Below, piece after piece: positions 20,502 through 46,713 of a DNA stretch of 64,000 bases (position 1 is the first letter of the stretch; every line of letters starts with the position of its first letter). The notes under the pieces were generated by a model. The model saw only the letters and a program-made list of their open reading frames with translations, did not search any database and was not told where the DNA came from. The stretch is taken from the IMG/VR virus record IMGVR_UViG_3300022921_000002, positions 157,448-221,447 of that record; one strand, written 5' to 3'. The position numbers were made by a program, and so were the translations under genes.

Positions 20502-20727
20502 AAGAGATAACAGCGCAAAAGTAATTCAAAAATTACAATATGACATTGACCAGGAAAAAAAGCAAAAGGCAATATATCGTAAAGAGATTGATGAGCTTCG
20601 GCAACAAAAGATGATGTTATTTGAAACAATGGTTGCACTTGTGGATGACGATACATATTGGTCAGATGATGCTAAACAGTCTGGTATTATAAACCGTTTG
20701 AAAAAAGTGCTACAACAAACCAAATAA
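20494..20727 (+). CDS. Hypothetical coiled-coil protein
   Basis: ORF coupled to the upstream gene. Confidence 0.45.
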   Translation: MAKRDNSAKVIQKLQYDIDQEKKQKAIYRKEIDELRQQKMMLFETMVALVDDDTYWSDDAKQSGIINRLKKVLQQTK

Positions 20728-20770
20728 CTATTGACATTACTAATAGAATCAGTTTATATTAGAATCATAA
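20725..20770 (+). promoter_or_regulatory. Early sigma70-type promoter element
   Basis: TTGACA 20731, 18 nt, TATATT 20755; GAATC at 20746 and 20762. Confidence 0.75.
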
Positions 20771-20792
20771 TAAATATAAACTTGAGGTAGTA

Positions 20793-21329
20793 ATGTTAAA
20801 TTTTGTCAAAAATACACCGATCGCAGTAACACAATCTGTTATCCGAATAATCCTTGTTCTAGGACTTGTAGTTGCTGCTAGCACAAGCCAAGCAGAAGCA
20901 CAACGGATTGTTGGATTTAATCCATTAGAATTCCCTGAAGAGCACTGTCTTGCCTTAAATATTTACTACGAAGCACGAGGTAGTAACCTGGCAGATAAAG
21001 CAGCTGTTGCTGATGTTGTTATAAATCGTATGAATGATACACGTTACCCAAATACAATTTGTGGTGTAGTACAAGACGGTTATGTTAAAGGTCGCCGTGA
21101 TTGCCAGTTTAGCTGGTACTGTGACGGAAAATCTGATGTTCCCATAGATCTTGACCGTTGGTCAGAAGCACAGAATATTGCGTTTGCAATGACAAAATGG
21201 AGTGAGTTCCGTGGCATCAGTGAAGGTGCAACTCATTACCATGCCGATTATGTACGTCCTTATTGGGCTTCAAGTCTACAACTTGTTGGTACAATCGGCC
21301 GTCACGTTTTTTACCGGTGGAATAAATAA
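20793..21329 (+). CDS. Cell wall hydrolase (SleB / Hydrolase_2 family) with signal or TM segment
   Basis: CLALNIYYEARG, VINR, PNTICGVV, CQFSWYCDG, GATHYHADYVRPYW, IGRHVFY. Confidence 0.9.
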   Translation: MLNFVKNTPIAVTQSVIRIILVLGLVVAASTSQAEAQRIVGFNPLEFPEEHCLALNIYYEARGSNLADKAAVADVVINRMNDTRYPNTICGVVQDGYVKGRRDCQFSWYCDGKSDVPIDLDRWSEAQNIAFAMTKWSEFRGISEGATHYHADYVRPYWASSLQLVGTIGRHVFYRWNK

Positions 21330-21460
21330 ATGATTGAAATAGTCGGAATATTCCGTGAAGAAGTAATTAAGAAAACATTCAAATGCCCTTTAGATGCAGG
21401 TGAGTTTAAAGATTTTCTTGATGCACAATACCCAATTAAAGTAATATGGAGGAAGATATA

Positions 21461-21772
21461 ATGTCAGAAGAAAGATACGTTGTTGTTACATCAGTTTCTC
21501 AATTTAGAATACGGCATGCTATTCCAATGAGTAAATTACAAGAACTCAATCCTGATATGCCTGTTGATCCCAAATGGGCTGAAGATACTGTTGTAATGAA
21601 TGAAGTAAAAGAATTTTCACAAACTCATCTTGGTGATACTATTATGGATACGTTTGTTCTTGATGAAGAAAGAGTACTTCAACTGTTTGACCGTGATAAT
21701 GATTATCTATCAGAATGGGATACAGAAAAGAAATTAAACTGGATCCATGATTGGAAGGAAAAACCACTGTGA
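21461..21772 (+). CDS. Hypothetical protein
   Basis: GGAGG upstream; intact ORF. Confidence 0.55.
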   Translation: MSEERYVVVTSVSQFRIRHAIPMSKLQELNPDMPVDPKWAEDTVVMNEVKEFSQTHLGDTIMDTFVLDEERVLQLFDRDNDYLSEWDTEKKLNWIHDWKEKPL

Positions 21773-21966
21773 CCCATTCCGTCGAAGAACTATATGAAAA
21801 GATAAATGTATTATATAACAAAGGAATAGAATTACACCGTGAAAGGTACCGTGTAGCAGGCAGTTATGATGAAATACAATGTCAGTATATGGTTGACGAT
21901 ATAAAAGCATTGGCACGCGAGATTGAACATGGTCCTATTGATTTAAATAGAGATTTTAGTAAGTAA
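21769..21966 (+). CDS. Hypothetical protein
   Basis: GTGA overlap with the upstream stop. Confidence 0.45.
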   Translation: MTHSVEELYEKINVLYNKGIELHRERYRVAGSYDEIQCQYMVDDIKALAREIEHGPIDLNRDFSK

Positions 21967-21967
21967 A

Positions 21968-22285
21968 ATGGAACATAAAGAATTAACACCTGACTGTTGG
22001 GTGGTAATAAGATCAAATAATACAGAGCCTCCGCATTATAGATTGCTTGTAGGTTTTGAAGAAAAAGATGAATATAAAGTTAGCACAAAGATTGAATCCT
22101 GTGAAGCTGTACAGAAAGATTATGTGTTTACAACCGACAAGGTAAAATATTTTTGTAATGACAAGAACCGTGGTTTAAGACCAGTTATTAACCACGTATA
22201 TCTTTCAATGGTTGACTCAAGTCAGCATGACATAACATTAGTCAGAAACGATGAGTATTTCTCACTACTACATTATATGGAATAA
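21968..22285 (+). CDS. Hypothetical protein
   Basis: Tightly packed ORF; TPDCWVVI N-terminal motif. Confidence 0.5.
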   Translation: MEHKELTPDCWVVIRSNNTEPPHYRLLVGFEEKDEYKVSTKIESCEAVQKDYVFTTDKVKYFCNDKNRGLRPVINHVYLSMVDSSQHDITLVRNDEYFSLLHYME

Positions 22286-22288
22286 AAT

Positions 22289-23056
22289 ATGAAAATTTTG
22301 ATATGCGGCCATGGTTTCGTTGGTAAGGCTCACGGGTTATTTTTATCATCACACCATGATATTAAAGTGTATGATCCACAATTGGGTTATAAAGATACTA
22401 CAGTATTTAATGATGCTGACGCAGTTATTATTGCCGTTTCCACTCCCGAAGGTGAAGATGGTCAATGCGATATGTCAAATGTGTATGACACAATCGAGCG
22501 CATTATGCCAGGAACACCTGTTCTTATAAAATCAACGGTCAGTCTTGAAGGTTGGCGGTTGATTAACCGTGCCTATCCAAATGAATTTATTACCTTTTCT
22601 CCCGAATACCTCCGAGCAGATTATGCTATGGAAGATTTTAAAAATCAAAAAAGTATAGCTGTAGGTGGCGGTGATGTTAATTTATGGGTTGGTATATTAT
22701 CAGAATCATTAGAAATACGTGTTGATATTATGAACCCCGAGGTACTTATTTTAAACAAGTATTTTAGAAATGCGTTTTTGGCAATGAAAGTTGCCTTCTT
22801 TGAACAGATGTATGATATGGCGATTACGTCAGGTGTTGATCCGCACGAATTATTGGCAACTGTTTCAGATGATAAACGTATTGGTAAAAGTCATACATAT
22901 ATTAATACAAATGACCGAGGTTTCGGTGGTCATTGTTTCCCAAAAGATACATCAGCTTTATTGGCAACAGGCCATCAAATGGGTTACGACTTGTCCATCT
23001 TATCCGAGGCAATGCAATACAATGAAAGGTTGCGAAATGAGAAAAATAATATATGA
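22289..23056 (+). CDS. UDP-glucose/GDP-mannose dehydrogenase family protein (short form)
   Basis: GHGFVG, AVSTP, IKSTV, FSPEYLR, KYFRNAFLAMKV, GFGGHCFPKD. Confidence 0.85.
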   Translation: MKILICGHGFVGKAHGLFLSSHHDIKVYDPQLGYKDTTVFNDADAVIIAVSTPEGEDGQCDMSNVYDTIERIMPGTPVLIKSTVSLEGWRLINRAYPNEFITFSPEYLRADYAMEDFKNQKSIAVGGGDVNLWVGILSESLEIRVDIMNPEVLILNKYFRNAFLAMKVAFFEQMYDMAITSGVDPHELLATVSDDKRIGKSHTYINTNDRGFGGHCFPKDTSALLATGHQMGYDLSILSEAMQYNERLRNEKNNI

Positions 23057-23246
23057 CAATATCTGCGAAGTCGTAAGTACACGGACCGATGTTATAGTTG
23101 AAGCTGAAGCCGATAATATGAGACCAGGAGTTTCATTTGAAGCATATGTAGCAAACAATAAAATTAAAATGAAATGGAACGGCAAGATTTACGTTGGTAA
23201 TGTGTCAGGTATGGAATTTACATCAACAGGACCTAAAGAACTATGA
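23037..23246 (+). CDS. Hypothetical protein
   Basis: AAAGG upstream; ends in ATGA overlap with the next gene. Confidence 0.5.
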   Translation: MRKIIYDNICEVVSTRTDVIVEAEADNMRPGVSFEAYVANNKIKMKWNGKIYVGNVSGMEFTSTGPKEL

Positions 23247-23650
23247 AGGTGGGGTTTACTGCATCGGCATTTGATTTACTCCACGCAGGACACGTTCAAA
23301 TGTTAAGAGATGCAAGAGAACAATGTGACTTTTTGATATGCGGATTGCAAATTGATCCGACATTAGACCGAGCCGATAAGAATGCTCCTGTGCAAAATAT
23401 AGTTGAAAGATATACACAATTAAAAGCAATTAGTTACGTTGATGAGATCATTCCGTATTTGACAGAATCAGATCTTTGTGATATATTATCAATGTACCAC
23501 ATAGATGTTCGTATTCTAGGTGTTGAGTACAAAGAAAAAGATTTCACAGGTAAAGACATATGCCGCAAACGTGGCATTGATTTATATTTTAATAAACGAG
23601 ATCACCGTTTTAGTACAAGTGATTTAAGAAGGAGAGTTTGTAATGACTGA
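23243..23650 (+). CDS. Cytidylyltransferase (TagD / glycerol-3-phosphate cytidylyltransferase-like)
   Basis: SAFDLLHAGHV, YVDEIIPY, RDHRFSTSDLR. Confidence 0.85.
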   Translation: MKVGFTASAFDLLHAGHVQMLRDAREQCDFLICGLQIDPTLDRADKNAPVQNIVERYTQLKAISYVDEIIPYLTESDLCDILSMYHIDVRILGVEYKEKDFTGKDICRKRGIDLYFNKRDHRFSTSDLRRRVCND

Positions 23651-23822
23651 TGGACCATTTAAAGCGGCATTTGATGCAGATACTACCGGCGTAGTGCATC
23701 GTGAGATTATAACCTATCGTATGAAGAACGGTATGATGGTAAAAGAAACCGCATGCCGTGATTACTATAAATCTGGTGATTACCATGATAGCATATCAAC
23801 ACAACCGTTGGTGCAACGATGA
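23643..23822 (+). CDS. Hypothetical small protein (59 aa)
   Basis: Manually translated MTDGPFKAAFDAD...QPLVQR; AGGAG RBS; fills the gap. Confidence 0.5.
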   Translation: MTDGPFKAAFDADTTGVVHREIITYRMKNGMMVKETACRDYYKSGDYHDSISTQPLVQR

Positions 23823-24001
23823 GTGATGAGCAATGGCAAATAGATTCTGATATGCTGATTCAACTTCATAATACCGCAAGGATTATGGAACAATCCGATA
23901 ATACGGCAGGTAATGAACTCCGACAAATTGCCGACCGTTTTAGTACACTAATTAAAAATGCACATAGTCGAAGACATTGGTGCAATGGGAATGAGAAATA
24001 A
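23819..24001 (+). CDS. Hypothetical protein
   Basis: ATGA-coupled ORF. Confidence 0.45.
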   Translation: MSDEQWQIDSDMLIQLHNTARIMEQSDNTAGNELRQIADRFSTLIKNAHSRRHWCNGNEK

Positions 24002-24166
24002 TGTTTAAATTGTTTAAATCTAATACAGACGCAGAAATTGATTTTGGGCAAGATGTATCAATGGTACCACAGATTGAAATAGTACCTGAGCCATCATTAT
24101 CAGATATGCTCAAATTGGTTGAAGAACGTCTTGACCGTATTGAAAGTAAAATTGACAAACTACTCA

Positions 24167-27193: not shown

Positions 27194-27293
27194 ATTAAAA
27201 TTTAAATGGTTGTATTTTAAACTACGATTTAAAAAAGATGTAATCAAAGATGAAGATGTAGACATTTACATATACGAGGCTGACGATGATTAG
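27165..27293 (+). CDS. Hypothetical 42-aa protein
   Basis: Manually translated MTNIEKLILKLKFKWLYFKLRFKK...IYIYEADDD; fills the gap. Confidence 0.35.
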   Translation: MTNIEKLILKLKFKWLYFKLRFKKDVIKDEDVDIYIYEADDD

Positions 27294-27993: not shown

Positions 27994-28217
27994 AAATGGA
28001 CTGGGATGAAACTGCAGTTCAAGTATTAGATCAAAGTGGCCATTATGAAGATGTTGAATATATTATCTATGAGGATATTGTTTACATTAGGCAATGGGAT
28101 GAAGATCTTCAAAGATATAGTGTAATCGCTATGACTGCTGAAATGTTTAGGGATTTTGGTTTTGCCCTCGACTTACCTGAAGGTGCATACATAACAAAAA
28201 GGAAAGAAGATGATTGA
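27981..28217 (+). CDS. Hypothetical acidic protein
   Basis: GGAG RBS before ATG 27981. Confidence 0.5.
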   Translation: MFTIEMDWDETAVQVLDQSGHYEDVEYIIYEDIVYIRQWDEDLQRYSVIAMTAEMFRDFGFALDLPEGAYITKRKEDD

Positions 28218-28458
28218 AATTTACGGAACACCAACTTGCGGATATTGTTTGAGAGCAAAAAGACTTGCACAGTCTCACGATATTGTGACAGAATATAAAG
28301 ATATAACCTTTACAAATTTTAGAGAGGAATTGCTTGAACGCAAATCTGATTATACAACGGTTCCTCAAATTTGGTGGCACGGAAAATATATTGGCGGTTA
28401 TAATGAATTAGCTAATGAAATCGAGAACACGAGAAATTTTGGAGATGGTCCTTTTTAA
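28210..28458 (+). CDS. Glutaredoxin
   Basis: CGYC active site, TVPQI, IGGY. Confidence 0.9.
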   Translation: MIEIYGTPTCGYCLRAKRLAQSHDIVTEYKDITFTNFREELLERKSDYTTVPQIWWHGKYIGGYNELANEIENTRNFGDGPF

Positions 28459-28512
28459 CTATTGACATTCCTGTTCTAATAGTGTAGATTAGAATCATCA
28501 AATAAAGGAATC
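28455..28512 (+). promoter_or_regulatory. Early sigma70-type promoter element
   Basis: TTAACTATTGACA, 17 nt, TAGATT (TG just upstream), then AGAATCATCAAATAAAGGA shared with other copies. Confidence 0.8.
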
Positions 28513-28517
28513 ATATT

Positions 28518-28760
28518 ATGACATACACCGTTGAACTCGACATTTCATCCGAAGCTGACCACAAAGAAGTTGTACAATTCGCAGCTGAACATGGCTGCCG
28601 TGTAATTATGCGTGTTGAAGAAGGTCCTGCTGGAGGAAATCCTCTTTACACATTTGGTTCTGAAAATTTTGATATGATCCAAGAATTAACCGAACAAGTA
28701 CTCGGTGCAGGCCACGGATTTGATGAAGAAGAACTTAAAACTATGATCGTGGAGGTATAA
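28518..28760 (+). CDS. Hypothetical early protein
   Basis: Directly behind the promoter element; GPAGGNP motif. Confidence 0.55.
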   Translation: MTYTVELDISSEADHKEVVQFAAEHGCRVIMRVEEGPAGGNPLYTFGSENFDMIQELTEQVLGAGHGFDEEELKTMIVEV

Positions 28761-28762
28761 TA

Positions 28763-30734: not shown

Positions 30735-31157
30735 ATGTGGTTTCATAAAGGTGAAGAATTTACCTCAGAAATGATTAAAGACTATATTGGATTTGTTTAC
30801 TGTATTACGGACAAATCCAATGATAAGAAATACATTGGCAAAAAATTGCTAATGTCAAAAAGGCGCCTACCACCTCTTAAAGGTAAAACCCGTCGACGTA
30901 TTAAAATCGTTGAGACTGATTGGCAAAAATATTATGGTTCATCTGAAGAAGTCAAACTGATGGTTGAAGAAAAAGGCGCCGACAATTTTCATAGAGAAAT
31001 ACTACACCTATGCCATAAGAAAGGTGAGCTCGGATATTTAGAACTCCGGGAGCAAATCTTACGTGATGTTTTATTGCGTGACGATTATTATAATGGAATT
31101 GTCCAAGCAAAAATTCACCGAAACCACATAAAGTCATTGACATATCTTATAGAATAG
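30735..31157 (+). CDS. GIY-YIG family endonuclease
   Basis: GFVYCITDKSNDKKYIGKK...YYGSS...YYN. Confidence 0.8.
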   Translation: MWFHKGEEFTSEMIKDYIGFVYCITDKSNDKKYIGKKLLMSKRRLPPLKGKTRRRIKIVETDWQKYYGSSEEVKLMVEEKGADNFHREILHLCHKKGELGYLELREQILRDVLLRDDYYNGIVQAKIHRNHIKSLTYLIE

Positions 31158-31180
31158 ATTATTATAGTCTAGAATCACAA
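31137..31180 (+). promoter_or_regulatory. Early sigma70-type promoter
   Basis: TTGACA 31137, 17 nt, TATTAT; AGAATCA at 31171. Confidence 0.6.
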
Positions 31181-31190
31181 GGAGATACCA

Positions 31191-31421
31191 ATGATTATCA
31201 AACGCAAATCAGCATACACCGGTCTTACTCGGTCAAAGGATATTCCTGTTGACCCACAAGGCTGGGCAATGTATCAGTCAGGTTACGGCAGTGTTGATGA
31301 ATGTCTTCCGTATCTTACTGATGAAGACCGTGACTTTATTTTGTCAGGTATGATGCCTGATGAATGGAACACTGCTATCAGTGCCGAACTAAAACTAATT
31401 GTGGAAGATACTTTTATATGA
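31191..31421 (+). CDS. Hypothetical protein
   Basis: AAGGAG RBS; PYLTDEDRDFILSG motif. Confidence 0.55.
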   Translation: MIIKRKSAYTGLTRSKDIPVDPQGWAMYQSGYGSVDECLPYLTDEDRDFILSGMMPDEWNTAISAELKLIVEDTFI

Positions 31422-35209: not shown

Positions 35210-35386
35210 ATGGCAAAAACGTTTAAGAAATTCCGCGAAGATTATATGGATGATGAATGGGGTGATGAAGACGAAACAGTTACCAACAAGGAACGTCGTA
35301 TGAAGAACCGCCGTGATAGGAAAAAAACTAAACGCAATGAACGCAATGAAACATTTTTAGAAAAAAATGATTTAAAAAGAAATTAA
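35210..35386 (+). CDS. Small charged protein (58 aa)
   Basis: Manually translated MAKTFKKFREDYMDDEW...DLKRN. Confidence 0.5.
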   Translation: MAKTFKKFREDYMDDEWGDEDETVTNKERRMKNRRDRKKTKRNERNETFLEKNDLKRN

Positions 35387-35446
35387 CTATTGACATTTGA
35401 GTACAAATAGTGTAGATTGATTCTATAAGGTAAAACAAAAGGAATC
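35368..35446 (+). promoter_or_regulatory. Early promoter element with TTAA-N7-TTAAC site
   Basis: TTAA 35372, N7, TTAAC 35383; TTGACA 35390, 17 nt, TAGATT 35413; GANTC at 35419 and 35442. Confidence 0.75.
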
Positions 35447-35452
35447 AATCTT

Positions 35453-35839
35453 ATGGGTACTTCATCAATGATCGCAAACTACAACGAAGACGGTACAGTT
35501 ACAGCAACATATTGCCATTACGATGGTTATCTTGCTTATAACGGCCGTCTTCTTTTTGAATCATATAACACTCCTGAAAAAGCAAAAGCTGTTGCTAATG
35601 CAGGTTATATCTCAGCTTTAAAAGAAGACTTGCAAACATCTTTAGATGAGTCAGTACATTCAAACCAATCTCCTGTAACATACAATTCAGTTGAAGATTT
35701 TCTGGCAAATGGCCGTGAATACGCTTGTGCTGATTACCTTTACCTGTTTGATGGTGACGCATGGTTCTTTGTTTCAACTATGAATGAAGGTCCATGGTTG
35801 ATGGAAGAAGTTGAAATGAATTTAGCGGTGGAGGCATAA
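35453..35839 (+). CDS. Hypothetical early protein
   Basis: MGTSSMI...YCHYDGY...YLYLF motif; behind the promoter. Confidence 0.6.
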   Translation: MGTSSMIANYNEDGTVTATYCHYDGYLAYNGRLLFESYNTPEKAKAVANAGYISALKEDLQTSLDESVHSNQSPVTYNSVEDFLANGREYACADYLYLFDGDAWFFVSTMNEGPWLMEEVEMNLAVEA

Positions 35840-35915
35840 ATTTGAAATTAAATCAAATTAACCATTGACATTCTCCGTAGAATCAGTTATATTAGAATCA
35901 TCAAATAAAGGAAAA
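35839..35915 (+). repeat. 77-bp promoter/stem-loop repeat, copy 1
   Basis: 72/77 identical to 44950-45026; contains AATTTGA/TCAAATT stem, TTGACA-17-TATATT, two GAATC and the SD. Confidence 0.9.
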
Positions 35916-35920
35916 ACCAA

Positions 35921-36286
35921 ATGACTACACAATTTAAAAACTTTGATCGCAAAAACCTGAAATCACTTCGTCAAGAAATGAGTGCACTACTTGCATCTTA
36001 TGGTGTATCAAGCAACCTTGATATTGAAGTTGGCAATATGTCTTTCAGTGATGCTGAAGTAAATATCAAAGTTTCAGCAAAAGTTAAAGGTGCGGTTACT
36101 ATGACTGATCGCATTCTTCAAATGGAAGTTGACCGTTTGGGTCTTTCTATGAAAAACCGTGATGGTGATGAACTCATTGAGTACAAATCCCGCTCACCAA
36201 AATATGCCTTTGTTTTCCGTTGTGGTAAAACTGGCAAAATGTTTAAAACCGATGAGCGTTCTGCAATCCGGCGGTTCGCATCCTAA
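35921..36286 (+). CDS. Hypothetical early protein
   Basis: Directly behind the repeat promoter and RBS. Confidence 0.6.
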   Translation: MTTQFKNFDRKNLKSLRQEMSALLASYGVSSNLDIEVGNMSFSDAEVNIKVSAKVKGAVTMTDRILQMEVDRLGLSMKNRDGDELIEYKSRSPKYAFVFRCGKTGKMFKTDERSAIRRFAS

Positions 36287-38290: not shown

Positions 38291-38297
38291 ATAACGC

Positions 38298-38528
38298 ATG
38301 GCAAATCCAAATTACGCATCCTTATTAGCACAAATTGCAGCGGAGACCGATCCCGTTGCTAAAGCAGCTTTGGAAGCACAACTTGTCATTGTCGCAGAAC
38401 TTACAGAAGAAGAAATAGAATTATTTGAGTATACCGCATTTGACTATATTGAATTTAACCCGGGTTATAATAACGAGTTCAAATCATATGTTGGCCAATA
38501 CTTTAATGACGACGGAGATTCAACCTAA
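38298..38528 (+). CDS. Hypothetical acidic virion-associated protein
   Basis: Between PAAR and fibre genes, coupled to the fibre. Confidence 0.5.
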   Translation: MANPNYASLLAQIAAETDPVAKAALEAQLVIVAELTEEEIELFEYTAFDYIEFNPGYNNEFKSYVGQYFNDDGDST

Positions 38529-41500: not shown

Positions 41501-43789
41501 AACTTAAGCATTACAAGTGCATCAAACGGAGCAACCATTTTCCTTTCAGGTACAGGATTTAATCCATCGGACGAGTTCCATGAATTTTATGTTTTATATG
41601 TTAGATCAACAAGTACAAGCCCTGTTATTACCTGGGACTCAAATATCTTTTGGGCATATCCAGGCGGTGCACCTGCCTTACCTGATTTTGGTAAAAGTAC
41701 TCTTTTAAGATTTGTTAGTTATAATGCAAATGCCACATCACCAGCTGTACCTTATTATACTGCTTTTATTGAAGTAGAAAACATATTACCCGACGGCCGC
41801 GGCGGACAAACTTTGGGATCATTTAATTATAGTGTCGCATACACTGGTGTTTTACCTTTGAAATTTGGTGGAGCGGTTTCACCTGAACCCGGTATACAGG
41901 ATGGTAATGTTTATGGGTCAGGAAACTTTGGTGATGGCGCGCATTGGTTTAATATTGATGGCGATACTCCTGGATATATTTGGGGCCATGCATCCGGCGC
42001 TTTATATTGTGTTGCTACACAACAATTTGGTGGTGGTGCTTATCAGCCTGGTACTGAGTCAATGTTTGAAAGTAGCCAACATAGAGACTTAACTTCTACT
42101 GCAGCAAATTCACCGTTTATGAGTCCAGACGGACTTAATTATTACAAAATTACTAACGATTACTCTCAATCTCCTGCCGGATATAAACTTCAACAGCATA
42201 CCGTAGGTACTGCATTTGATTTAAGTACGATAGCTACAAGTCCAACCAACACTATTACAGTTACCGATTCGGCAACAAACCAAAACTTCTATGATTCAAG
42301 TGGAAATTGGGGACGGCCTACTTTTATAAATTTTTCAAGTGATGGCACAAAGTTGTTTATTGGCGGAAGAATTGCAGTATTAGCAAGATATGATTTAAGC
42401 GTAGCTTGGGATATTTCCACCATAACTTTTTCATCAGGTACTATTGCTCAAGCAGATCAATCGGTACGGTTCCAATCCTCAAATTCGGCAACAAGTAGTG
42501 GAAGCTGGTTTATGACAGGAGATGGATCTCAGGTTTGGTTCCAAAACAACGGAACCGGCACCATTATGAGTGTTGATATTCCAACACCTTATGATTTATC
42601 TTCAGTAACAAACCCAACTACGGATCCGGTATCACAAGGTAACTATTCTAATGAATCAACAGCTTGGCCGTCAAATGGTTATCCTGCTGCTTTACTATGG
42701 AGTGAGGCAACCGCAACAGAAGCAGCAGGTAAATATTTCTTTATAATAAGAAATACCTCGGGGGCATGCCCAACGTGCCATCGTGGAACTTGTAGTACTC
42801 CATACGATTTATCTACAATTACCTGGGATGACATTTTACCTACAGGTAGTAATATAGGAGCGTTAAGGGATCAAAACGATAGTAATGAAATCTCTTTAAA
42901 CATTAGTATGGAAGATGGCATATATTTTAGAAACGAAAGTCAAGCAAGCACCAATGATAATTATGTTGTGGTTTTGGCATATGTGAACTCTAACAATGGG
43001 TTAGAGAGATGGGTACATTCAATAACTGACGGTAAGATTAATACAATAAATCCAACATTTTATGCTAAAGATAGTAATTATGATGGAACGGAATACCGAA
43101 CGTTTGGTTTAGACTTTACTCAAACTGAACAAATGGTATTTTTGGAAAGAAGAAGATATGGCAGTCCTTCTAATTATAATTGGTATATAAGTTATTGCAA
43201 TTTGCAAATTGGAAGTGGTTCATCTACGTTACCTGGAATTTCACGTAAAGATATTACAAGCGTGATAACCGAAGGTGGCTCATTGGCAACAAACCTTTCT
43301 ACAATATATGTAGTCGGTTTACAGTTAAGAAAAGATCAGCTTTGGGCAAGCAACGGCAACCCTGAAATGTATGTCTTGAAAATGGTTCAGTCAACAGAGG
43401 TTTATCTCCAAAGAATTGTTAATACGTCAGGTAGAACATCGGCAAATAACACTAATAGCGGTTGGTCAACTGCCACCCCTTACGTAGTATTAGATTTATA
43501 TAACTTAACGAACTATCCTCAAGATTCTAGGATTGCTGATTTTGTTATAACTCCTGACGGTACGAGACTTATTTGTGTATTTGAAGATGCATCTTTACAT
43601 CAGTGGTCAATGTCCACAGCTTGGGATATTACAAGTACAATTACTCACGACGGAACACAGTATATACCGATTAAACGAGGAACTGCTCATATGCCTACAC
43701 ATATCCGTTTTAATTCAGACGGTACATTAGTTTACATTGTGAATAGAGATAGCATGGTTTATCAATATTCAGTTCTATTAGATATTTAA
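38528..43789 (+). CDS. Long tail fibre / receptor-binding protein
   Basis: 1753 aa, Thr/Ser/Gly-rich; GYIRYNSTLNQFEGY; shaft repeats (NWDTAYGWGDHS, TETDPxF, DxHLN); C-terminal beta-propeller-like repeats (xxDGTxL, LSxAWDIST); followed by a chaperone gene. Confidence 0.8.
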   Translation: MAITKRSTKGTSLTYNEMDDNFEAIAPRTSAEGSLQLPSGSTSQRDTTPINGYIRYNSTLNQFEGYVSGQWERVESTTQVGTANQNAFSEFIIAGQTSILADAVTDSITFANNAGISITTDPLTSTITFENTSIQDFAFSSLTGVPTTISGYGITDAFDGDYTNLTNKPTIPTNNNELLNGAGYISSFTETDPIFSASAAANIISSQVSNWDTAYGWGDHSIQGYITTESNDLTVGVTWVTVPDLYIANTAVVQHQADLSITESQISDLGSYITEVPSEYLTETEGDARYVTTETDPVFSAHTTSNIVDGTGYLYNNGSGTWIYGIPGGGGGSEVNDLTSVVTWTTVPDAYISESSVTQHQAALSITESQISDFGSYLADDYTYTETDPIFLASPVGSVTTTQVSNWDTAYGWGDHSTQGYITGGSITETDPVFTAATVSSITDGTGYLTNDGSGNWSYVSPSTFITQGNETVTTLTADSVNQKLVYTDEDGTQNDVDLSWTIDDTNLARLTSGSVNSNTKIATFTRDDASTFTIDFSSIAAPLTGLVDGDFTSEGLMKRGQNAGDYEIITDNSSNWNTAYGWGDHSTAGYSTTSYSDSDVDTHLNQGSASAGQLLSWNGSDYQFTDPPASGIALTDFSVIQNTPGTPTLSYNNSTGAFTYTPPDLSSYLTSETSHADVVVDGDFATTGLMKRGVSAGSYTTITDNSGNWDTAYGWGDHSQAGYATGTLYTDSDVDSHLNSSTATVNQVLSWTGADYDWITLATSSYGDNDVNLHLNQASAGTNNVLIWDGSDYAWTTQVSGGIASVNDDTSPSLGGNLNLNGYNITGTQINLNASSFVGIPPTTLDGGRLVFNQGQTGTPSSSNTNWSYIEVERGNSTNVSLRWHEGLDRWEFTNNGTTWEEMGSATPDWTDIQNTPTTIAGYGITDAYDDSAVDTHLNRNTAQINEVLTWDGSDYAWSQATGGAAATENVNYVTISGSTTILLANEGHFNLSITSASNGATIFLSGTGFNPSDEFHEFYVLYVRSTSTSPVITWDSNIFWAYPGGAPALPDFGKSTLLRFVSYNANATSPAVPYYTAFIEVENILPDGRGGQTLGSFNYSVAYTGVLPLKFGGAVSPEPGIQDGNVYGSGNFGDGAHWFNIDGDTPGYIWGHASGALYCVATQQFGGGAYQPGTESMFESSQHRDLTSTAANSPFMSPDGLNYYKITNDYSQSPAGYKLQQHTVGTAFDLSTIATSPTNTITVTDSATNQNFYDSSGNWGRPTFINFSSDGTKLFIGGRIAVLARYDLSVAWDISTITFSSGTIAQADQSVRFQSSNSATSSGSWFMTGDGSQVWFQNNGTGTIMSVDIPTPYDLSSVTNPTTDPVSQGNYSNESTAWPSNGYPAALLWSEATATEAAGKYFFIIRNTSGACPTCHRGTCSTPYDLSTITWDDILPTGSNIGALRDQNDSNEISLNISMEDGIYFRNESQASTNDNYVVVLAYVNSNNGLERWVHSITDGKINTINPTFYAKDSNYDGTEYRTFGLDFTQTEQMVFLERRRYGSPSNYNWYISYCNLQIGSGSSTLPGISRKDITSVITEGGSLATNLSTIYVVGLQLRKDQLWASNGNPEMYVLKMVQSTEVYLQRIVNTSGRTSANNTNSGWSTATPYVVLDLYNLTNYPQDSRIADFVITPDGTRLICVFEDASLHQWSMSTAWDITSTITHDGTQYIPIKRGTAHMPTHIRFNSDGTLVYIVNRDSMVYQYSVLLDI
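39144..39774 (+). repeat. Intragenic direct repeats in the fibre gene
   Basis: 43-bp exact repeat at 39144-39186 and 39732-39774; 30-bp repeat at 39302-39331 and 39617-39646. Confidence 0.85.
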
Positions 43790-43801
43790 GGAAAGAGAAT
43801 A

Positions 43802-44233
43802 ATGCTTATACGAGTTAATGAAGATGGTACAATAATATATCCAGTAGAAGGTAAGGACATTCAAAAGTACGTTGAATTAGAAGGACTTGAGATTGAAGAT
43901 TTTACTGATTTGGATCTCTCAACAATTAGGATATATCCAGTTGACATACAAAATCCTGTAGGTACTGAAACGCAATCTGCCGTGCAGCATACCGAACCGA
44001 CATTGGTTGATGGCAATTGGGTTTTAGGATTTGATTTAGTATACCATTCTAATGAGGAATTAATTCAAAGCGCAAGTATTAAAAGGTGGAGACTATTATC
44101 TGAAACCGATTGGATGGCATGCTCGGATGTAACCATGAGCGATAATTGGAAAACCTATCGACAAGCACTACGTGATATTACTGAACAGGATGGATATCCT
44201 CAAACTATCAATTGGCCAACAAAACCTATTTGA
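43802..44233 (+). CDS. Tail fibre assembly chaperone
   Basis: RWRLLSETDW...WKTYRQALRDITEQDGYP..INWPTKP. Confidence 0.85.
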   Translation: MLIRVNEDGTIIYPVEGKDIQKYVELEGLEIEDFTDLDLSTIRIYPVDIQNPVGTETQSAVQHTEPTLVDGNWVLGFDLVYHSNEELIQSASIKRWRLLSETDWMACSDVTMSDNWKTYRQALRDITEQDGYPQTINWPTKPI

Positions 44234-44270
44234 CAAGTTCCTACTTCTATGATATTATACAATAGAATCA
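44230..44270 (+). promoter_or_regulatory. Early sigma70-type promoter
   Basis: TTGACA 44230, 17 nt, TATTAT; GAATC at 44265. Confidence 0.6.
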
Positions 44271-44285
44271 GATAAAGGATATATT

Positions 44286-44951
44286 ATGTTTAACCATGTT
44301 GACCACGGTGTTGTTTTACCTAAAATTACACGAGGTGCAGTAAACGGTCACCGCAAGTACTACACACCTGAAGGTAATGCTTACCCATCAATCACAACAG
44401 TTTTATCCATACTTTCAAAAGAAGGAATTATGGAATGGCGTAAACGTGTTGGTGAAGAGGAAGCAAATAAGATTTCTCGTCAAGCAGCAACTCGTGGTAC
44501 AGCAGTACACAAACTTGCTGAAGATTACCTTAACAATGATCCAAATTGGCAAGGTAAACAAATGCCCGCTAATTTAAATTCATTTAATGATTTGAGAAAG
44601 ATTATCGACGGTCGTTTAGATAACGTGTGGATGCAAGAAGAGTTTCTTTATAGTGATAAACTTAAGACTGCAGGTCAGGTTGATTGTATTGCCGAATATG
44701 ATGGTGAACTATCAGTAATTGATTTTAAAACAAGTCGTAAACCAAAAAAGGCAGAATGGATTGAAGGTTACTTTATTCAAGCATCATTTTATGCCGCGGC
44801 ATTCCTTGAAAGAACAGGTATACCAATCAAACAAGCAGTAATCCTTATTACAGTTGATGGCCATGAGGCACAAGTATTTAAGATCAGAACATTTGATTAT
44901 CTTGAACACTTCCTTGCAGTCCGTAAAAAATATGCTGAAATAAATGAATAA
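44286..44951 (+). CDS. PD-(D/E)xK exonuclease
   Basis: YPSITTVL, RGTAVH, AGQVDCIAEY, IDFKTS, YFIQ. Confidence 0.85.
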   Translation: MFNHVDHGVVLPKITRGAVNGHRKYYTPEGNAYPSITTVLSILSKEGIMEWRKRVGEEEANKISRQAATRGTAVHKLAEDYLNNDPNWQGKQMPANLNSFNDLRKIIDGRLDNVWMQEEFLYSDKLKTAGQVDCIAEYDGELSVIDFKTSRKPKKAEWIEGYFIQASFYAAAFLERTGIPIKQAVILITVDGHEAQVFKIRTFDYLEHFLAVRKKYAEINE

Positions 44952-45026
44952 TTTGAAATTAAATCAAATTAACCATTGACATTTGGAATAGAATCAGTTA
45001 TATTAGAATCATCAAATAAAGGAAAA
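44950..45026 (+). repeat. 77-bp promoter/stem-loop repeat, copy 2
   Basis: 72/77 identical to 35839-35915. Confidence 0.9.
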
Positions 45027-45031
45027 CTACT

Positions 45032-45376
45032 ATGACAAAATTCGACAAAACAAAATTTAGCTTTCACGGCGGTTACTTGACATACACAGGTGATTATGAA
45101 GGTCGTCCTGTCTATAAAGAAGGTAAAAATGTTCATCCTTCAAATGTAGGTCGTGGCATTGATTTGTTTATTGCTCGTTTCAAGTACAGTGGTACACCAA
45201 TCACAAAAGCAAAATTTCTTAAAGAACTGATTAGAAATTTTACTGTTGAAGAATATGTTGCAGCTCGTAACGGTCACGAAGTTTCGCCATTAGGAGTTCT
45301 TGATAACAAAAACCCAGGTTGGTCCGATAAGATTGTAGTAGCTTGGCGTGAAAAGCGAGGTATGAAAACTCTATGA
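45032..45376 (+). CDS. Hypothetical early protein
   Basis: Behind the repeat promoter; FIARFKY motif. Confidence 0.6.
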   Translation: MTKFDKTKFSFHGGYLTYTGDYEGRPVYKEGKNVHPSNVGRGIDLFIARFKYSGTPITKAKFLKELIRNFTVEEYVAARNGHEVSPLGVLDNKNPGWSDKIVVAWREKRGMKTL

Positions 45377-45942
45377 ATATATTTGTCCTTGATGAAAACC
45401 CCAAAATCGCGGCACAGATGGTCTGTGATAAGCATTGCTCGAAGATGATTATTGAGTCAGGGCAAATGCTTTCTACGGCCCATAGAATGCTTGACGGCTA
45501 TATAGAACCGCGACCTTCTAAATCAGGAAAACGTATCGTAAAATATTACGTTCATCCTGACACTGAAATGGAGAATGTTCTATACAAAGCGGTACATCAT
45601 TATCATCCTTGCACCGTTTGGTCGACGTTATCAAAAGCTAATTATATATGGCATTATGAGCACTTTCTAGGGCTCATAGAAGAATTCTCAGTGCGGTACA
45701 AAAAGTATCATATGACTGCGAGTAAGCTTAAAGATATCCTTGCTAGTCCTCCGCAGAATATACCGGATATTGGTATAACAGAATTTCCGCAAGCAATGAA
45801 TAATTTTCCTTTATGTAAGGTTGAAGGTAATCCTGTTAGTGCATATCGTAAGTATTATAGTATGACTAAACATTTTGCAAAATGGGAAAAAGGTCGTGAA
45901 GCGCCATCGTGGTGGCAAGGATTTATAGGATACCCAGCGTGA
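45373..45942 (+). CDS. Pyrimidine dimer DNA glycosylase / endonuclease V-like protein
   Basis: MNIFVLD...CDKHCSKMIIESGQMLSTAH...HPCTVW...AYRKYY. Confidence 0.75.
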   Translation: MNIFVLDENPKIAAQMVCDKHCSKMIIESGQMLSTAHRMLDGYIEPRPSKSGKRIVKYYVHPDTEMENVLYKAVHHYHPCTVWSTLSKANYIWHYEHFLGLIEEFSVRYKKYHMTASKLKDILASPPQNIPDIGITEFPQAMNNFPLCKVEGNPVSAYRKYYSMTKHFAKWEKGREAPSWWQGFIGYPA

Positions 45943-46265
45943 GATATATTCTGTTAGATCAAGATGCTGGTATTTTTTTAGGTACACACCGTGTTCCTTT
46001 AGGTAACAATGAGTACGAAGGTTTTGTTATATTTTCATTAAACAATCCGTTTGGAATAACAAAGGCATATTCGTTTGATAATATAAAAGATGCTGAACTC
46101 TATATGCGGGCTTTTTTAATTAACGAATTTCCTGATATCCGTGTACTTGAAATTGAATGTCAAAACAAATACGTTGATGTTGTTGACCTACTCAAAAACG
46201 GTCTTGATGAGTTTACCTTTGATATGATTGATAATATTCCAATGATAAATGATACAGTTCATTAA
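45939..46265 (+). CDS. Hypothetical protein
   Basis: GTGA coupling; intact ORF. Confidence 0.5.
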   Translation: MRYILLDQDAGIFLGTHRVPLGNNEYEGFVIFSLNNPFGITKAYSFDNIKDAELYMRAFLINEFPDIRVLEIECQNKYVDVVDLLKNGLDEFTFDMIDNIPMINDTVH

Positions 46266-46344
46266 TTTCTTTTTAAATCAAATTAACTATTGACATTTGG
46301 TTTAGAATCAGTTATATTATTAATATAACAAATGAAAAGGAATC
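46262..46344 (+). promoter_or_regulatory. Early promoter element with stem-loop and TTAA-N7-TTAA
   Basis: TTAA 46262, N7, TTAA 46273; TTGACA 46290, 17 nt, TATATT 46313; GAATC at 46305 and 46340. Confidence 0.8.
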
Positions 46345-46348
46345 AGTT

Positions 46349-46678
46349 ATGACAACTCAAACTCAAAAATTTTGGAAAGAAACACCACTTGCAAACGTAG
46401 CTTCATTAGTCGCAACTTTTCGTGGTTACGCTGCCCAGGAGGCTGATCTTGCTGATCTGTATAATTCAGACGCAGATGATTTTCATAAAGCAATTGTTCT
46501 TTTTCGTCAGTCGGACTCTGAAGGTCTTTCACAATACGTTTCAGAAATGGATACTTCTGCTCGTGAAGACTTGGTTGAAGCTTTTTGGTTTGACTGTGGT
46601 AACGATTTCGTTGAAAATGTTCTTGGTTTTTCAATGAGTAAATCTTGGATTAGAGAGAATACTCAGCAAGCTGCATAA
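46349..46678 (+). CDS. Hypothetical early protein, similar to a module of the 1038-4301 polyprotein
   Basis: YA...DxxDFxKA...VxxxDTxxRExL shared pattern. Confidence 0.6.
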   Translation: MTTQTQKFWKETPLANVASLVATFRGYAAQEADLADLYNSDADDFHKAIVLFRQSDSEGLSQYVSEMDTSAREDLVEAFWFDCGNDFVENVLGFSMSKSWIRENTQQAA

Positions 46679-46713
46679 TAACTATTGACAAATGCTTTAG
46701 AATCAGATATATT
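46678..46713 (+). promoter_or_regulatory. Early sigma70-type promoter
   Basis: TTGACA 46685, 17 nt, TATATT 46708; GAATC at 46700. Confidence 0.8.

What the first reader, a model, noticed from the sequence alone, without database searches (positions are those of the whole stretch)
20725..46713. Early promoter family with positionally fixed GANTC sites and CtrA-like boxes
Seen: nine sigma70-type promoters (TTGACA at 20731, 28462, 31137, 35390, 35865, 44230, 44976, 46290, 46685). Five have TAGAATCAG immediately before the -10 box and seven have GANTC just downstream of it. TAACYAT overlaps the -35 in seven, and full TTAA-N7-TTAA sites occur at 35372 and 46262. Known: in Alphaproteobacteria CcrM methylates GANTC, GcrA activates sigma70 promoters at methylated GANTC, and CtrA binds TTAA-N7-TTAA and TTAACCAT. 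Inference: early transcription may be wired to host methylation and cell-cycle regulators. Caveat: the genome is AT-rich, GAATC is common in its coding DNA, and shared ancestry of the repeat could explain fixed positions.
Basis: partly seen in the sequence, partly recalled or inferred. Interest (0 to 1): 0.7.

Follow-up and report, generated by a model that had tools for sequence, protein, structure and literature searches.

The report
Phage early promoters with AGAATCA boxes
The window holds a repeated family of strong early promoters of a T4-like marine phage. Their -10 box is flanked by a selected 7-base element (AGAATCA) that contains GANTC, but the proposed link to alphaproteobacterial CcrM/GcrA is only one candidate reading and the CtrA link is not supported.

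Summary
The window is the last 64 kb of a complete 221-kb T4-like phage genome from salt-marsh and seawater metagenomes.

**The family.** Seven of the nine sites belong to one family with 15 members genome-wide and more than 117 stretches in IMG/VR. Site 31137 is a weak member and 44230 belongs to another sigma70 class. Each member is a cassette: an A/T-rich block, TTGACA, a 17-18 bp spacer, TATATT/TAGATT, a leader, a Shine-Dalgarno site and ATG. This resembles the PeSL early-promoter cassettes of T4-type phages, but without a consistent stem-loop.

**The selected unit.** It is a heptamer, AGAATCA or its complement TGATTCT, at -20..-16 and/or directly after the -10.
- 104 of 111 promoter clusters carry at least one copy.
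- Loss of the spacer copy goes with gain of the downstream copy (Fisher p = 2e-6).
- The heptamer is 14-fold enriched in promoter windows, while GAWTC is depleted genome-wide (O/E 0.63).

**GcrA/CcrM reading.** The heptamer fits GcrA's YGAKTCK preference, and an alphaproteobacterial host is plausible. Against it:
- the positions lie just outside the known GcrA ranges;
- only GAWTC behaves specially, not GANTC in general;
- phages of Sinorhizobium and Rhizobium lack the arrangement;
- a phage recorded on Pseudoalteromonas carries the same heptamers as an inverted repeat around its -10.

**CtrA reading.** CtrA motifs are not enriched.

I give about 0.4 to a protein other than GcrA and about 0.2 to GcrA.

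The parts
20723..20795 (+). Class-A early promoter cassette. AATAACTA block 20723-20730; -35 TTGACA 20731-20736; AGAATCA 20745-20751; -10 TATATT 20755-20760 (18-bp spacer); AGAATCA 20761-20767; ATG 20793 of a 178-aa cell-wall hydrolase ORF.
28454..28520 (+). Class-A cassette without a spacer heptamer. -35 28462-28467; -10 TAGATT 28485-28490; AGAATCA 28491-28497 directly after the -10; GGAATCA 28507-28513 in the Shine-Dalgarno region; ATG 28518 (80-aa ORF).
35372..35455 (+). Class-A cassette without a spacer heptamer. TTAA-N7-TTAA 35372-35386; -35 35390-35395; -10 TAGATT 35413-35418; flipped heptamer TGATTCT 35418-35424; GGAATCA 35441-35447; ATG 35453 (128-aa ORF).
35857..35923 (+). Class-A cassette. 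TTAACCA block; -35 35865-35870; AGAATCA 35879-35885; -10 TATATT 35888-35893; AGAATCA 35894-35900; ATG 35921 (121-aa ORF).
44968..45034 (+). Class-A cassette. -35 44976-44981; AGAATCA 44990-44996; -10 44999-45004; AGAATCA 45005-45011; ATG 45032 (114-aa ORF). Assembly unitigs of public runs break here.
46262..46351 (+). Class-A cassette. TTAA-N7-TTAA 46262-46276, which does not abut the -35; -35 46290-46295; AGAATCA 46304-46310; -10 46313-46318; GGAATCA 46339-46345; ATG 46349 (109-aa ORF).
46677..46752 (+). Class-A cassette. -35 46685-46690; AGAATCA 46699-46705; -10 46708-46713; no downstream heptamer; ATG 46750 (317-aa DUF932 protein).
31137..31193 (+). Weak or atypical member (profile E 0.016). 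-35 31137-31142; -10 TATTAT 31160-31165; AGAATCA 31171-31177, centred about +3; ATG 31191.
44230..44288 (+). Not a family member. It is a second sigma70-like class (TTGACAa ... TGA-TAnnnT). -35 44230-44235; -10 TATTAT 44253-44258; AGAATCA 44264-44270, centred about +3; ATG 44286 (221-aa PD-(D/E)XK nuclease).

Best explanation
These are early promoter cassettes of a T4-like phage, read by the host's primary-sigma RNA polymerase.

**Shown from sequence.** Each cassette has an A/T-rich upstream block, TTGACA, a 17-18 bp spacer, TATATT or TAGATT, a short leader, a Shine-Dalgarno site and ATG. Each sits in front of a small early ORF. This is the PeSL type of cassette.

**Shown statistically.** The lineage has added a 7-bp element, AGAATCA in either orientation. 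It lies 3 bp upstream of the -10 (-20..-16), directly downstream of it (-6..-1), or both. Nearly every promoter keeps at least one copy, and GAWTC, the pentamer at its core, is purged elsewhere in the genome.

**Inferred.** The element is the binding site of a sequence-specific DNA-binding protein that works next to the -10 and tunes or switches off early transcription. That protein is more likely one that goes with these phages, phage-encoded being the simplest case, than the alphaproteobacterial CcrM/GcrA pair. Three reasons:
1. The same 8-bp arms form an inverted repeat around the -10 in a distant phage recorded on a gammaproteobacterium.
2. Only GAWTC, not GANTC, behaves specially.
3. The positions miss the known GcrA windows.

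Sub-claim confidences: sigma70 early promoters 0.95; heptamer under selection 0.85; reader is a protein other than GcrA about 0.4.
For: **Phage identity.** T4-like capsid, portal, sheath and terminase proteins. Complete 221-kb virus record.

**Family.**
- 15 members with E-values of 1e-10 to 1e-20. The variable first half of the spacer contrasts with a near-invariant TAGAATCAGT.
- More than 117 IMG/VR stretches, giving 147 unique promoters.

**Heptamer placement.**
- GAATC at -20 in 115 of 147 promoters. Of the 32 promoters without it, 24 have GANTC at -6 or -5.
- 104 of 111 clusters carry at least one copy. The two positions are negatively associated (odds ratio 0.10, p = 2e-6).
- GATTCTAT occurs only where the spacer copy is missing.

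**Enrichment and depletion.**
- In promoter windows (2.4% of the genome), AGAATCA/TGATTCT occurs 27 times against 1.9 expected. Other GANTC occurs 8 times against 7.2 expected.
- GAWTC O/E is 0.63 while GASTC is 1.1-1.26.

**Phage XG4.** It shares 55 ORFs with this phage at a median 33.5% identity. It has 11 promoters with TGATTCT in the spacer and AGAATCA after the -10, forming ATGATTCT-N12-AGAATCAT. GcrA was found in 1 of 151 genomes of the order that should hold its recorded host, and that hit was weak.

**PeSL description.** PMC4122927.
Against: - No candidate reader protein was identified. The gene-profile comparison found only topoisomerase II subunits, a thymidylate-synthase-like protein and one unknown 420-aa protein shared with XG4.
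- The XG4 record is flagged UNVERIFIED_ORG, is unannotated and contains a large inverted duplication. Its host label is therefore weak evidence.
- The heptamer does fit GcrA's YGAKTCK in 118 of 122 sites (PMC4647560).
- The arrangement differs between the two phages: direct repeats 15-16 bp apart or single copies here, inverted repeats in XG4. That is unusual for a single dimeric protein.
- Sister phages with about 80% capsid identity have an equally conserved but different spacer without the heptamer. Spacer conservation alone therefore proves nothing.
- No transcription start sites or expression timing could be obtained.
Confidence: 0.4

Rival explanations
1. The heptamers are GcrA boxes. 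The host is an alphaproteobacterium whose CcrM methylates the GANTC core. GcrA bound to sigma70 region 2 recognises the methylated box beside the -10 and boosts open-complex formation, tying early phage transcription to the host's methylation and cell-cycle state.
For: - 118 of 122 heptamers fit YGAKTCK, and TGATTCT differs from the Caulobacter optimum TGATTCG only at the last K (PMC4647560).
- GcrA acts as a monomer on boxes in the -35/-10 spacer or just downstream of the start. The solved complex uses TTGACA-N7-GAATC-N5-TATAAT with the same strand orientation (PMC9976885).
- Promoter enrichment is confined to the YGAKTCK subclass.
- Host hints: an alpha-type permuted tmRNA at 106.7 bits; the nearest cultured capsid and terminase relatives infect Sinorhizobium; the tmRNA tag of sister phage G405 resembles that of a low-GC Rhodobacteraceae MAG that has both GcrA and a full-length CcrM homologue.
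- GANTC is depleted here (0.79) and in phiM12 (0.62), but not in about 1.8 Mb of other T4-like loci (1.03-1.06).
Against: - The box is 2 bp closer to the -10 than in the solved complex. It is centred at -18 against -20 +/- 1. The second box is centred at -3, where Caulobacter shows almost no sites.
- The centre base is always W. GASTC is not depleted, whereas in phiM12 all four GANTC words are.
- The phage has no PF01555 methyltransferase and no GcrA. The methylation state of the virion DNA is unknown.
- phiM12 has no fixed GANTC in its early promoters (8 of 25 with any). RHph_I1_18 has none in its few sigma70-like sites.
- Closer relatives lack the heptamer.
- The same heptamers occur in phage XG4, recorded on Pseudoalteromonas. 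GcrA was found in 1 of 151 genomes of the order that should hold that host, and the hit was weak.
- An alpha-type tmRNA is documented in a phage of a non-alpha host (PMC9004378).
- Near-consensus promoters need no activator.
Confidence: 0.2
2. There is no separate reader. The heptamers are part of an optimised strong-promoter context (spacer, discriminator and a CAT start). Concerted evolution and recombination among mobile PeSL-type cassettes keep them uniform, and the GANTC is incidental.
For: - Sister phages keep a different but equally conserved second half of the spacer without GANTC.
- phiM12 keeps AAATCAT at the same start region.
- The classic coliphage T5 early promoter reads TATAAT-AGATTCAT in a host without CcrM.
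- PeSL cassettes are known to be conserved from the upstream A/T block to the start codon and to recombine (PMC4122927).
- Assembly graphs break at these repeats.
Against: - The compensation between the two positions includes a single-base C/A covariation: GATTCTAT against GATTATAT.
- The same heptamer is used in both orientations.
- The element forms a perfect 8-bp inverted repeat around the -10 in XG4.
- GAWTC is depleted genome-wide.
- Contacts made by RNA polymerase itself should not tolerate an orientation flip.
Confidence: 0.25
3. TTAACYAT and TTAA-N7-TTAA next to the -35 are CtrA boxes that place the promoters under the host cell-cycle response regulator.
For: TTAAC lies at -42..-38 in 85 of 147 family members. 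The exact half-site TTAACCAT occurs in 4 of the 15 members of this genome. Full TTAA-N7-TTAA sites occur at 35372 and 46262.
Against: - Genome-wide counts are at or below chance: TTAA-N7-TTAA 17 against 15.4 +/- 3.6; TTAACCAT 15 against 23 +/- 6; TTAACYAT 37 against 36.
- In the family, TTAACCAT occurs in 11 of 147 members.
- The upstream half-site is at N7 in 14 members and at N6 in 21, so the full box is not conserved.
- Variants such as AATAACTA break TTAA.
- The homologous block in phiM12, whose host has CtrA, reads TTCCC.
- The block is better read as part of the A/T-rich UP-like region shared with phiM12 and XG4 (AATAATTTGAAATT-like).
Confidence: 0.03
4. The heptamer is a site for DNA transactions rather than transcription. 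It could be recognised by a homing or nicking endonuclease, a recombinase or a sequence-specific base-modifying enzyme, and this would explain why the cassettes are mobile.
For: - PeSLs were proposed to mediate homologous or site-specific recombination.
- The cassette is shared by phages whose shared proteins are only about 33% identical.
- A thymidylate-synthase-like gene, possibly a pyrimidine hydroxymethylase, is shared only by the heptamer-bearing phages compared.
Against: Compensation between two positions that both hug the -10, and the symmetric placement around the -10 in XG4, point to transcription. No enzyme was linked to the site.
Confidence: 0.07

Closest known systems
PeSL (promoter-early stem-loop) cassettes of T4-type phages (Arbiol 2010, PMC2839356; Comeau 2014, PMC4122927)
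   Same: An A/T-rich upstream block, a near-consensus sigma70 promoter (TTGACA-N17-TATAAT in RB49/phi1), and a Shine-Dalgarno site with the start codon at the 3' end. The cassettes are repeated many times before small ORFs in the variable, non-structural regions of a T4-like genome.
   Different: There is no consistent stem-loop or terminator upstream (z-scores about 0). This lineage adds AGAATCA heptamers flanking the -10, which are not described for PeSLs. Association with indels was not tested.
GcrA/CcrM-dependent promoters of Caulobacter (PcsM, PmipZ; PMC4647560, PMC9976885)
   Same: A GANTC-containing 7-mer matching YGAKTCK lies in the -35/-10 spacer and near the start, in the same strand orientation as in PcsM. 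The published reader acts as a monomer beside sigma70 region 2, which would tolerate variable arrangements.
   Different: The boxes are centred at -18 and -3 rather than at -20 +/- 1, -30 +/- 2 or +5..+30. The centre base is only W. The host is unknown. No methylation data exist. The same element occurs in a phage recorded on a gammaproteobacterium.
Early promoter family of Sinorhizobium phage phiM12 (NC_027204)
   Same: The nearest cultured relatives by capsid and terminase. They share the UP-like block (AATAATTTGAAATT), a TTGAC -35, a 17-18 bp spacer, an AATCAT-type start and a purine-rich leader.
   Different: The -10 is CTAAKT-like. Inverted repeats flank the -35. GANTC is not fixed (8 of 25 promoters, scattered positions) and there is no TTAAC block.
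Promoter family of Pseudoalteromonas phage vB_Psh_XG4 (PP712099, flagged UNVERIFIED_ORG)
   Same: The cassette is 82% identical over about 80 nt. It has TATAAT followed by AGAATCATCAAAT and uses the same heptamer.
   Different: The second copy is flipped and sits next to the -35, giving ATGATTCT-N12-AGAATCAT. The genome has 31% GC and over-represented GAWTC (1.35-1.41), and no tmRNA was found by ARAGORN. The recorded host is a gammaproteobacterium.
Coliphage T5 early promoter at NC_005859:63086 (I believe this is PN25, from memory)
   Same: A strong sigma70 early promoter with an A/T-rich upstream region and TATAAT-AGATTCAT, so GAWTC occupies the discriminator.
   Different: It is a single instance rather than a family rule. 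It has no spacer copy, and the centre base and flanks differ (AGATTCA, which is the lowest-ranked GcrA word).

Membership tests
sigma70-type bacterial promoter | -35 hexamer close to TTGACA | tested here: met
   Exact TTGACA in all nine sites and all 15 family members.
sigma70-type bacterial promoter | 17 +/- 1 bp spacer and a TAnnnT -10 hexamer | tested here: met
   The spacer is 17 bp in eight of the nine sites and 18 bp in one. The -10 is TATATT, TAGATT or TATTAT. All 147 related promoters have a 17-bp spacer.
sigma70-type bacterial promoter | Mapped transcription start and dependence on host RNA polymerase | not testable with these tools
   Only assembled contigs of the metatranscriptome runs are served. 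They break at the repeats and give no 5' ends.
PeSL cassette of T4-type phages | A/T-rich block, sigma70 promoter, Shine-Dalgarno site and start codon conserved as one unit, repeated in variable regions of a T4-like genome | tested here: met
   compared with the description in PMC4122927.
PeSL cassette of T4-type phages | Stem-loop (terminator) just upstream of the promoter | tested here: not met
   Folding of -75..-3 in the 15 members gave z-scores from -2.4 to +1.6 with no common hairpin. Only three members have a weak A/T hairpin.
PeSL cassette of T4-type phages | Association with indels or gene swaps between close relatives | not tested
   Not examined. The only related observation is that the cassette is shared with a very distant phage.
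GcrA/CcrM-dependent promoter | GANTC with flanks fitting YGAKTCK | tested here: met
   118 of 122 heptamers at the two positions fit: AGAATCA, CGAATCA, TGATTCT, AGAATCG, CGAATCG.
GcrA/CcrM-dependent promoter | Box centred at -20 +/- 1 or -30 +/- 2 in the spacer, or at +5 to +30 | tested here: not met
   The boxes are centred at -18 and -3, counting the -10 as -12..-7. The solved complex has N7-GAATC-N5, whereas here it is N9-GAATC-N3. True start sites are unknown, so the offset could be 1 bp smaller.
GcrA/CcrM-dependent promoter | Host encodes CcrM and GcrA | tested here: inconclusive
   The host is unknown. Candidate low-GC Rhodobacteraceae MAGs have both genes. The phage has neither. The same element occurs in a phage recorded on Pseudoalteromonas, and GcrA was found in 1 of 151 genomes of the order that should hold that host, weakly.
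GcrA/CcrM-dependent promoter | N6-adenine methylation of the box in the DNA that is transcribed | not testable with these tools
   No long-read or methylation data are accessible.
GcrA/CcrM-dependent promoter | All GANTC words, not one variant, are the relevant unit | tested here: not met
   Only GAATC and GATTC occur in the promoters (122 of 122), and only they are depleted (0.63 against 1.1-1.26 for GASTC). In phiM12 all four words are depleted.
CtrA-regulated promoter | TTAA-N7-TTAA at a fixed place near the -35 | tested here: not met
   Present in 14 of 147 family members, while N6 spacing is present in 21. Genome-wide the count is 17 against 15.4 expected.
CtrA-regulated promoter | Half-site TTAACCAT | tested here: not met
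   Present in 11 of 147 members, with TTAACTAT in 69. Genome-wide the count is 15 against 23 expected.

The most novel reading that the evidence does not exclude
A clade of marine T4-like phages has built the host's GcrA/CcrM epigenetic signal into nearly all of its early promoters, as a methylatable TGATTCT box on one or both sides of the -10. Early transcription would then read the methylation state of the injected DNA and the cell-cycle state of a low-GC roseobacter-type host. This would be the first phage promoter family wired to the alphaproteobacterial cell-cycle methylation circuit.
Probability: 0.2. Interest if true: 0.8.

Novelty: new variant of a known kind. Interest (0 to 1): 0.45.

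Why it matters
Early promoters of T4-like phages outside the enterobacterial group are mostly predicted only as generic sigma70 sites.

This analysis finds a second layer in a widespread group of marine phages: a short element that hugs the -10. It is kept by compensation between two positions and in either orientation, and it is purged from the rest of the genome. That is the signature of a regulator's binding site, so it gives a concrete handle on how these phages control or shut off early transcription. That question is open for T4-like phages, such as the cyanophages, that are known to lack MotA/AsiA (from memory; neither gene was searched for in this phage).

If it is a phage protein, the heptamer is the bait to find it.

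The work also shows that a motif match to a famous host regulator can be misleading until relatives with known hosts are compared.

Tried and rejected
- **Public reads.** I laid public metatranscriptome and DNA runs on 43700-47900. Only assembled unitigs are served. They break at the promoter repeats and show similar depth in RNA and DNA runs, so they give no start sites and no evidence of transcription.
- **Megablast.** An 18-kb megablast against cultured phages found nothing.
- **Host from tmRNA.** BLAST of the phage tmRNA against 401 alphaproteobacterial genomes gave only weak partial matches (71-73% over about 100 nt) and no names. No specific host follows.
- **Host from binning.** Capsid relatives sit in MAGs labelled as a dozen phyla, including archaea, so binning is unreliable. 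One Rhodobacteraceae bin holds at least six different T4-like capsid contigs.
- **Promoter arrangement in MAGs.** The arrangement was not found in three alphaproteobacterial MAGs.
- **Phage-encoded CcrM or GcrA.** None was found. One partial relative has a 246-aa beta-class methyltransferase that is not a CcrM equivalog (90 bits against a cut-off of 830).
- **Upstream stem-loops.** None are consistent across members.
- **-10-like hypothesis.** I considered that TAGAAT in the heptamer is a second -10-like hexamer. I rejected this because the flipped form TGATTCT serves equally.
- **Other regulators.** From memory, I compared the element with Fur, FNR, Cra, alpha-type LexA and ARG boxes. None fits the spacing or orientation.
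- **Gene-profile search.** A search for a reader shared with XG4 and G405 but absent from four phages without the heptamer gave no DNA-binding candidate.
- **Complex prediction.** I did not run a GcrA-DNA complex prediction, because jobs with DNA get no verdict.

Full report
**What the window is.** The window is bases 157,448-221,447 of a 221,447-bp virus record that CheckV rates complete. Its G+C content is 37.5%. It encodes T4-type major capsid, portal, sheath and large terminase proteins, and also ribonucleotide reductase, DNA ligase and a cluster of sugar-modifying enzymes. The rest of the genome holds the T4-type replication set. Near-identical DNA is present in salt-marsh and seawater metagenomes and metatranscriptomes. 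The nearest cultured relatives by capsid (67% identity) and terminase (58%) are the Sinorhizobium phages phiM12, phiM7, phiM19 and phiN3.

**Check of the observation.** The pattern is not chance. TTGACA-N7-TAGAATCAG occurs 11 times in the genome and never in the reversed control. A profile built from the aligned sites finds 15 members with E-values of 1e-10 to 1e-20 and nothing comparable elsewhere. Members lie on both strands, always co-oriented with the following ORF. Site 31137 is marginal (E 0.016). Site 44230 belongs to a second sigma70-like class with TTGACAa and a TGTGA-type motif before the -10.

**Family consensus.** The order of elements is:
- an A/T-rich block ending in ATTAACYA;
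- TTGACA;
- TTT plus four variable bases;
- TAGAATCAGT;
- TATATT;
- then either AGAATCAW, GATTCTAT or an A/T-rich stretch;
- a leader ending in AAAGGAA;
- ATG.

Information content is low in the first half of the spacer and high in the second half. The family has therefore diverged enough for conservation to be meaningful.

**Known kind.** This matches the PeSL cassettes of T4-type phages: an A/T-rich region, a near-consensus sigma70 promoter, a Shine-Dalgarno site and a start codon, repeated in the variable regions (PMC4122927). The stem-loop that gives PeSLs their name is not consistently present here. Public assemblies break exactly at these repeats. The first genes downstream are small ORFs of unknown function, a cell-wall hydrolase and a DUF932 protein.

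**The selected unit is a heptamer.** A pattern scan of IMG/VR returned more than 117 stretches carrying the spacer motif. They range from near-identical to loci with no detectable nucleotide similarity outside the cassettes. From these I collected 147 unique promoters, of which 62 had not been selected by the search pattern.
- GAATC sits at -20..-16 in 115 promoters (counting the -10 as -12..-7).
- Of the 32 without it, 24 have GANTC at -6 or -5, either as AGAATCA or flipped as TGATTCT. These 32 have many different spacers, so they are not one copied cassette.
- After clustering at about 86% identity, 104 of 111 clusters have at least one copy. The two positions are negatively associated (odds ratio 0.10, Fisher p = 2e-6).
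- GATTCTAT never occurs together with a spacer copy. Promoters with a spacer copy carry one-base variants there, such as GATTATAT or GTTTATAT.
- In this genome, sigma70-like promoter windows cover 2.4% of the sequence but hold 27 of the 81 AGAATCA/TGATTCT heptamers (1.9 expected). GANTC words outside the YGAKTCK class are at expectation (8 against 7.2).
- Genome-wide, GANTC is the most depleted of the 16 NNxNN palindromes (O/E 0.79). The depletion comes entirely from GAATC and GATTC (0.63 and 0.64). GAGTC and GACTC are at 1.26 and 1.10.

Together these results argue that the heptamer is a functional site and that stray copies are selected against.

**For the GcrA/CcrM reading.**
GcrA prefers YGAKTCK, with TGATTCG as the optimum (PMC4647560). 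TGATTCT and the observed variants fit in 118 of 122 cases.
- GcrA boxes lie in the spacer or just after the start. GcrA works as a monomer tethered to sigma70 region 2 (PMC9976885).
- The solved complex uses TTGACA-N7-GAATC-N5-TATAAT in the same strand orientation.
- The phage carries an alpha-type permuted tmRNA (RF01849, 106.7 bits; tag ANDNYKPSGFALAA).
- A complete 201-kb sister phage (G405) has 17 copies of the promoter family. Its tmRNA tag is ANANRAPAMAIAA. This resembles ANDNKAPMALAA, the tag of the bacterial tmRNA in a low-GC Rhodobacteraceae MAG that encodes both GcrA and a full-length CcrM homologue.

**Against the GcrA/CcrM reading.**
- The box here is N9-GAATC-N3. It is centred at -18, one base pair outside the published -20 +/- 1. 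The second box is centred at -3, where Caulobacter promoters have almost no sites.
- Only GAWTC is special here. In phiM12, whose host certainly has CcrM, all four GANTC words are depleted.
- The phage has no CcrM-type methyltransferase and no GcrA. Boxes on injected DNA would therefore depend on host methylation during the previous infection.
- The early promoter family of phiM12 shares the upstream block, the -35 and an AATCAT start, but has no fixed GANTC (8 of 25 promoters, scattered). Rhizobium phage RHph_I1_18 has only five sigma70-like sites of this form, none with GANTC.
- Phages with 75-84% capsid identity, including contigs binned with the Rhodobacteraceae MAG, have an equally conserved but different spacer without the heptamer and no GANTC depletion.
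- An alpha-type tmRNA has been documented in a phage of a non-alphaproteobacterial host (PMC9004378).

**The XG4 result.** This was the most damaging result for the GcrA reading.
- A BLAST of one cassette against cultured phages hit eight places in Pseudoalteromonas phage vB_Psh_XG4.
- XG4 is only distantly related: 55 shared ORFs at a median 33.5% identity.
- Seventeen of its promoters carry the same heptamer.
- Eleven have TGATTCT next to the -35 and AGAATCA directly after TATAAT. This forms a perfect 8-bp inverted repeat with a 12-bp spacer over the -10, the classic shape of an operator.
- I sampled 151 genomes of the order of an Alteromonadales-labelled MAG, which should be the order of XG4's recorded host (the tool does not name the order). 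GcrA was found in one of them, weakly.
- The record is flagged UNVERIFIED_ORG, is unannotated and contains a large inverted duplication. This evidence is serious but not final.

**CtrA.**
- TTAA-N7-TTAA, TTAACCAT and TTAACYAT are all at or below chance in the genome.
- In the family, the exact half-site occurs in 11 of 147 members.
- The upstream half-site is more often at N6 (21 members) than at N7 (14 members), and common variants break TTAA.
- The block is better seen as the end of an UP-like A/T region. The core of that region (AATAATTTGAAATT-like) is shared with phiM12 and XG4.

**Verdict.**
- Certain: this is a family of PeSL-like sigma70 early promoter cassettes.
- Likely (0.85): the AGAATCA heptamer beside the -10 is a selected cis-element.
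- Open: who reads it. I put about 0.4 on a sequence-specific protein other than GcrA. A phage-encoded one is the simplest case, given the sharing with XG4 and the operator-like symmetry there. I put 0.25 on a promoter-intrinsic context kept by concerted evolution. The T5 promoter TATAAT-AGATTCAT shows that such a discriminator exists without CcrM. I put 0.2 on GcrA/CcrM, under 0.1 on a recombination or modification site, and about 0.03 on CtrA.

Methylation calling, host identification, 5'-end mapping and in vitro transcription with heptamer point mutants would settle the matter.

Noticed in passing
outside the window: genome 142,768-143,077 (L009:1269-1577): The phage encodes a circularly permuted, alpha-type two-piece tmRNA (RF01849, 106.7 bits; tag ANDNYKPSGFALAA). 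It lies about 1 kb downstream of two class-A promoters. The same tag occurs on a phage contig in a Rhodobacteraceae MAG, which holds about seven such low-scoring tmRNA copies.
   Followed up: partly
window 38528-43789 (+): A 1,753-aa ORF in the early region has no Pfam match at all.
   Followed up: no
window 12492-27193 (+): Ribonucleotide reductase genes (the small chain fused to an ATP-cone) are followed by a cluster of surface-sugar or base-modification genes: a class I/II aminotransferase, an NAD-dependent epimerase/dehydratase, a GT17-like glycosyltransferase and a carbamoyltransferase. At 1038-4301 there is also a 1,087-aa cytidylyltransferase-like/DUF5824 protein.
   Followed up: no
outside the window: genome 86,819-87,517 (-): A divergent thymidylate-synthase-family protein (232 aa, 50.9 bits) is shared with G405 and XG4 but not with phiM12, RHph_I1_18, DLP6 or Melnitz. 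It might be a pyrimidine hydroxymethylase, which would mean modified bases in the heptamer-bearing phages. T4-type topoisomerase II subunits show the same distribution.
   Followed up: partly
outside the window: genome 115,420-117,462 (+): A 680-aa protein with a CHASE2 sensor domain and an adenylate/guanylate cyclase domain is encoded by the phage.
   Followed up: no
window 44230-44258 and about 14 other genome sites: There is a second sigma70-like promoter class, gTTGACAa ... TGTGA/TGTAA/TATGA-TAnnnT. It lacks the class-A upstream block and mostly lacks GANTC.
   Followed up: partly
phiM12 (L014-L022), e.g. 98,854 and 150,044: Early promoters of phiM12 carry an inverted repeat (AATTCCC ... 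GGGAATT) that brackets the -35. This is another lineage-specific operator-like feature in the same cassette type.
   Followed up: no
XG4 record PP712099 (L366-L373), about 65-96 kb: The same promoters appear mirrored on both strands over tens of kilobases. This suggests a large inverted duplication or an assembly artefact in a record that is also flagged UNVERIFIED_ORG and unannotated.
   Followed up: no
L315:1435-2172 (IMG/VR relative G408): One partial relative that carries the promoter motif encodes a 246-aa beta-class N6-adenine methyltransferase. Its best solved relatives are DpnA-like enzymes and CcrM. It is not a CcrM equivalog, and its specificity is unknown.
   Followed up: partly
Genome-contig loci L225-L302: T4-like capsid contigs are binned into MAGs labelled as many unrelated phyla, including archaea. 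An isolate assembly of Nonlabens xiamenensis holds a 188-kb T4-like contig with 63% capsid identity.
   Followed up: no
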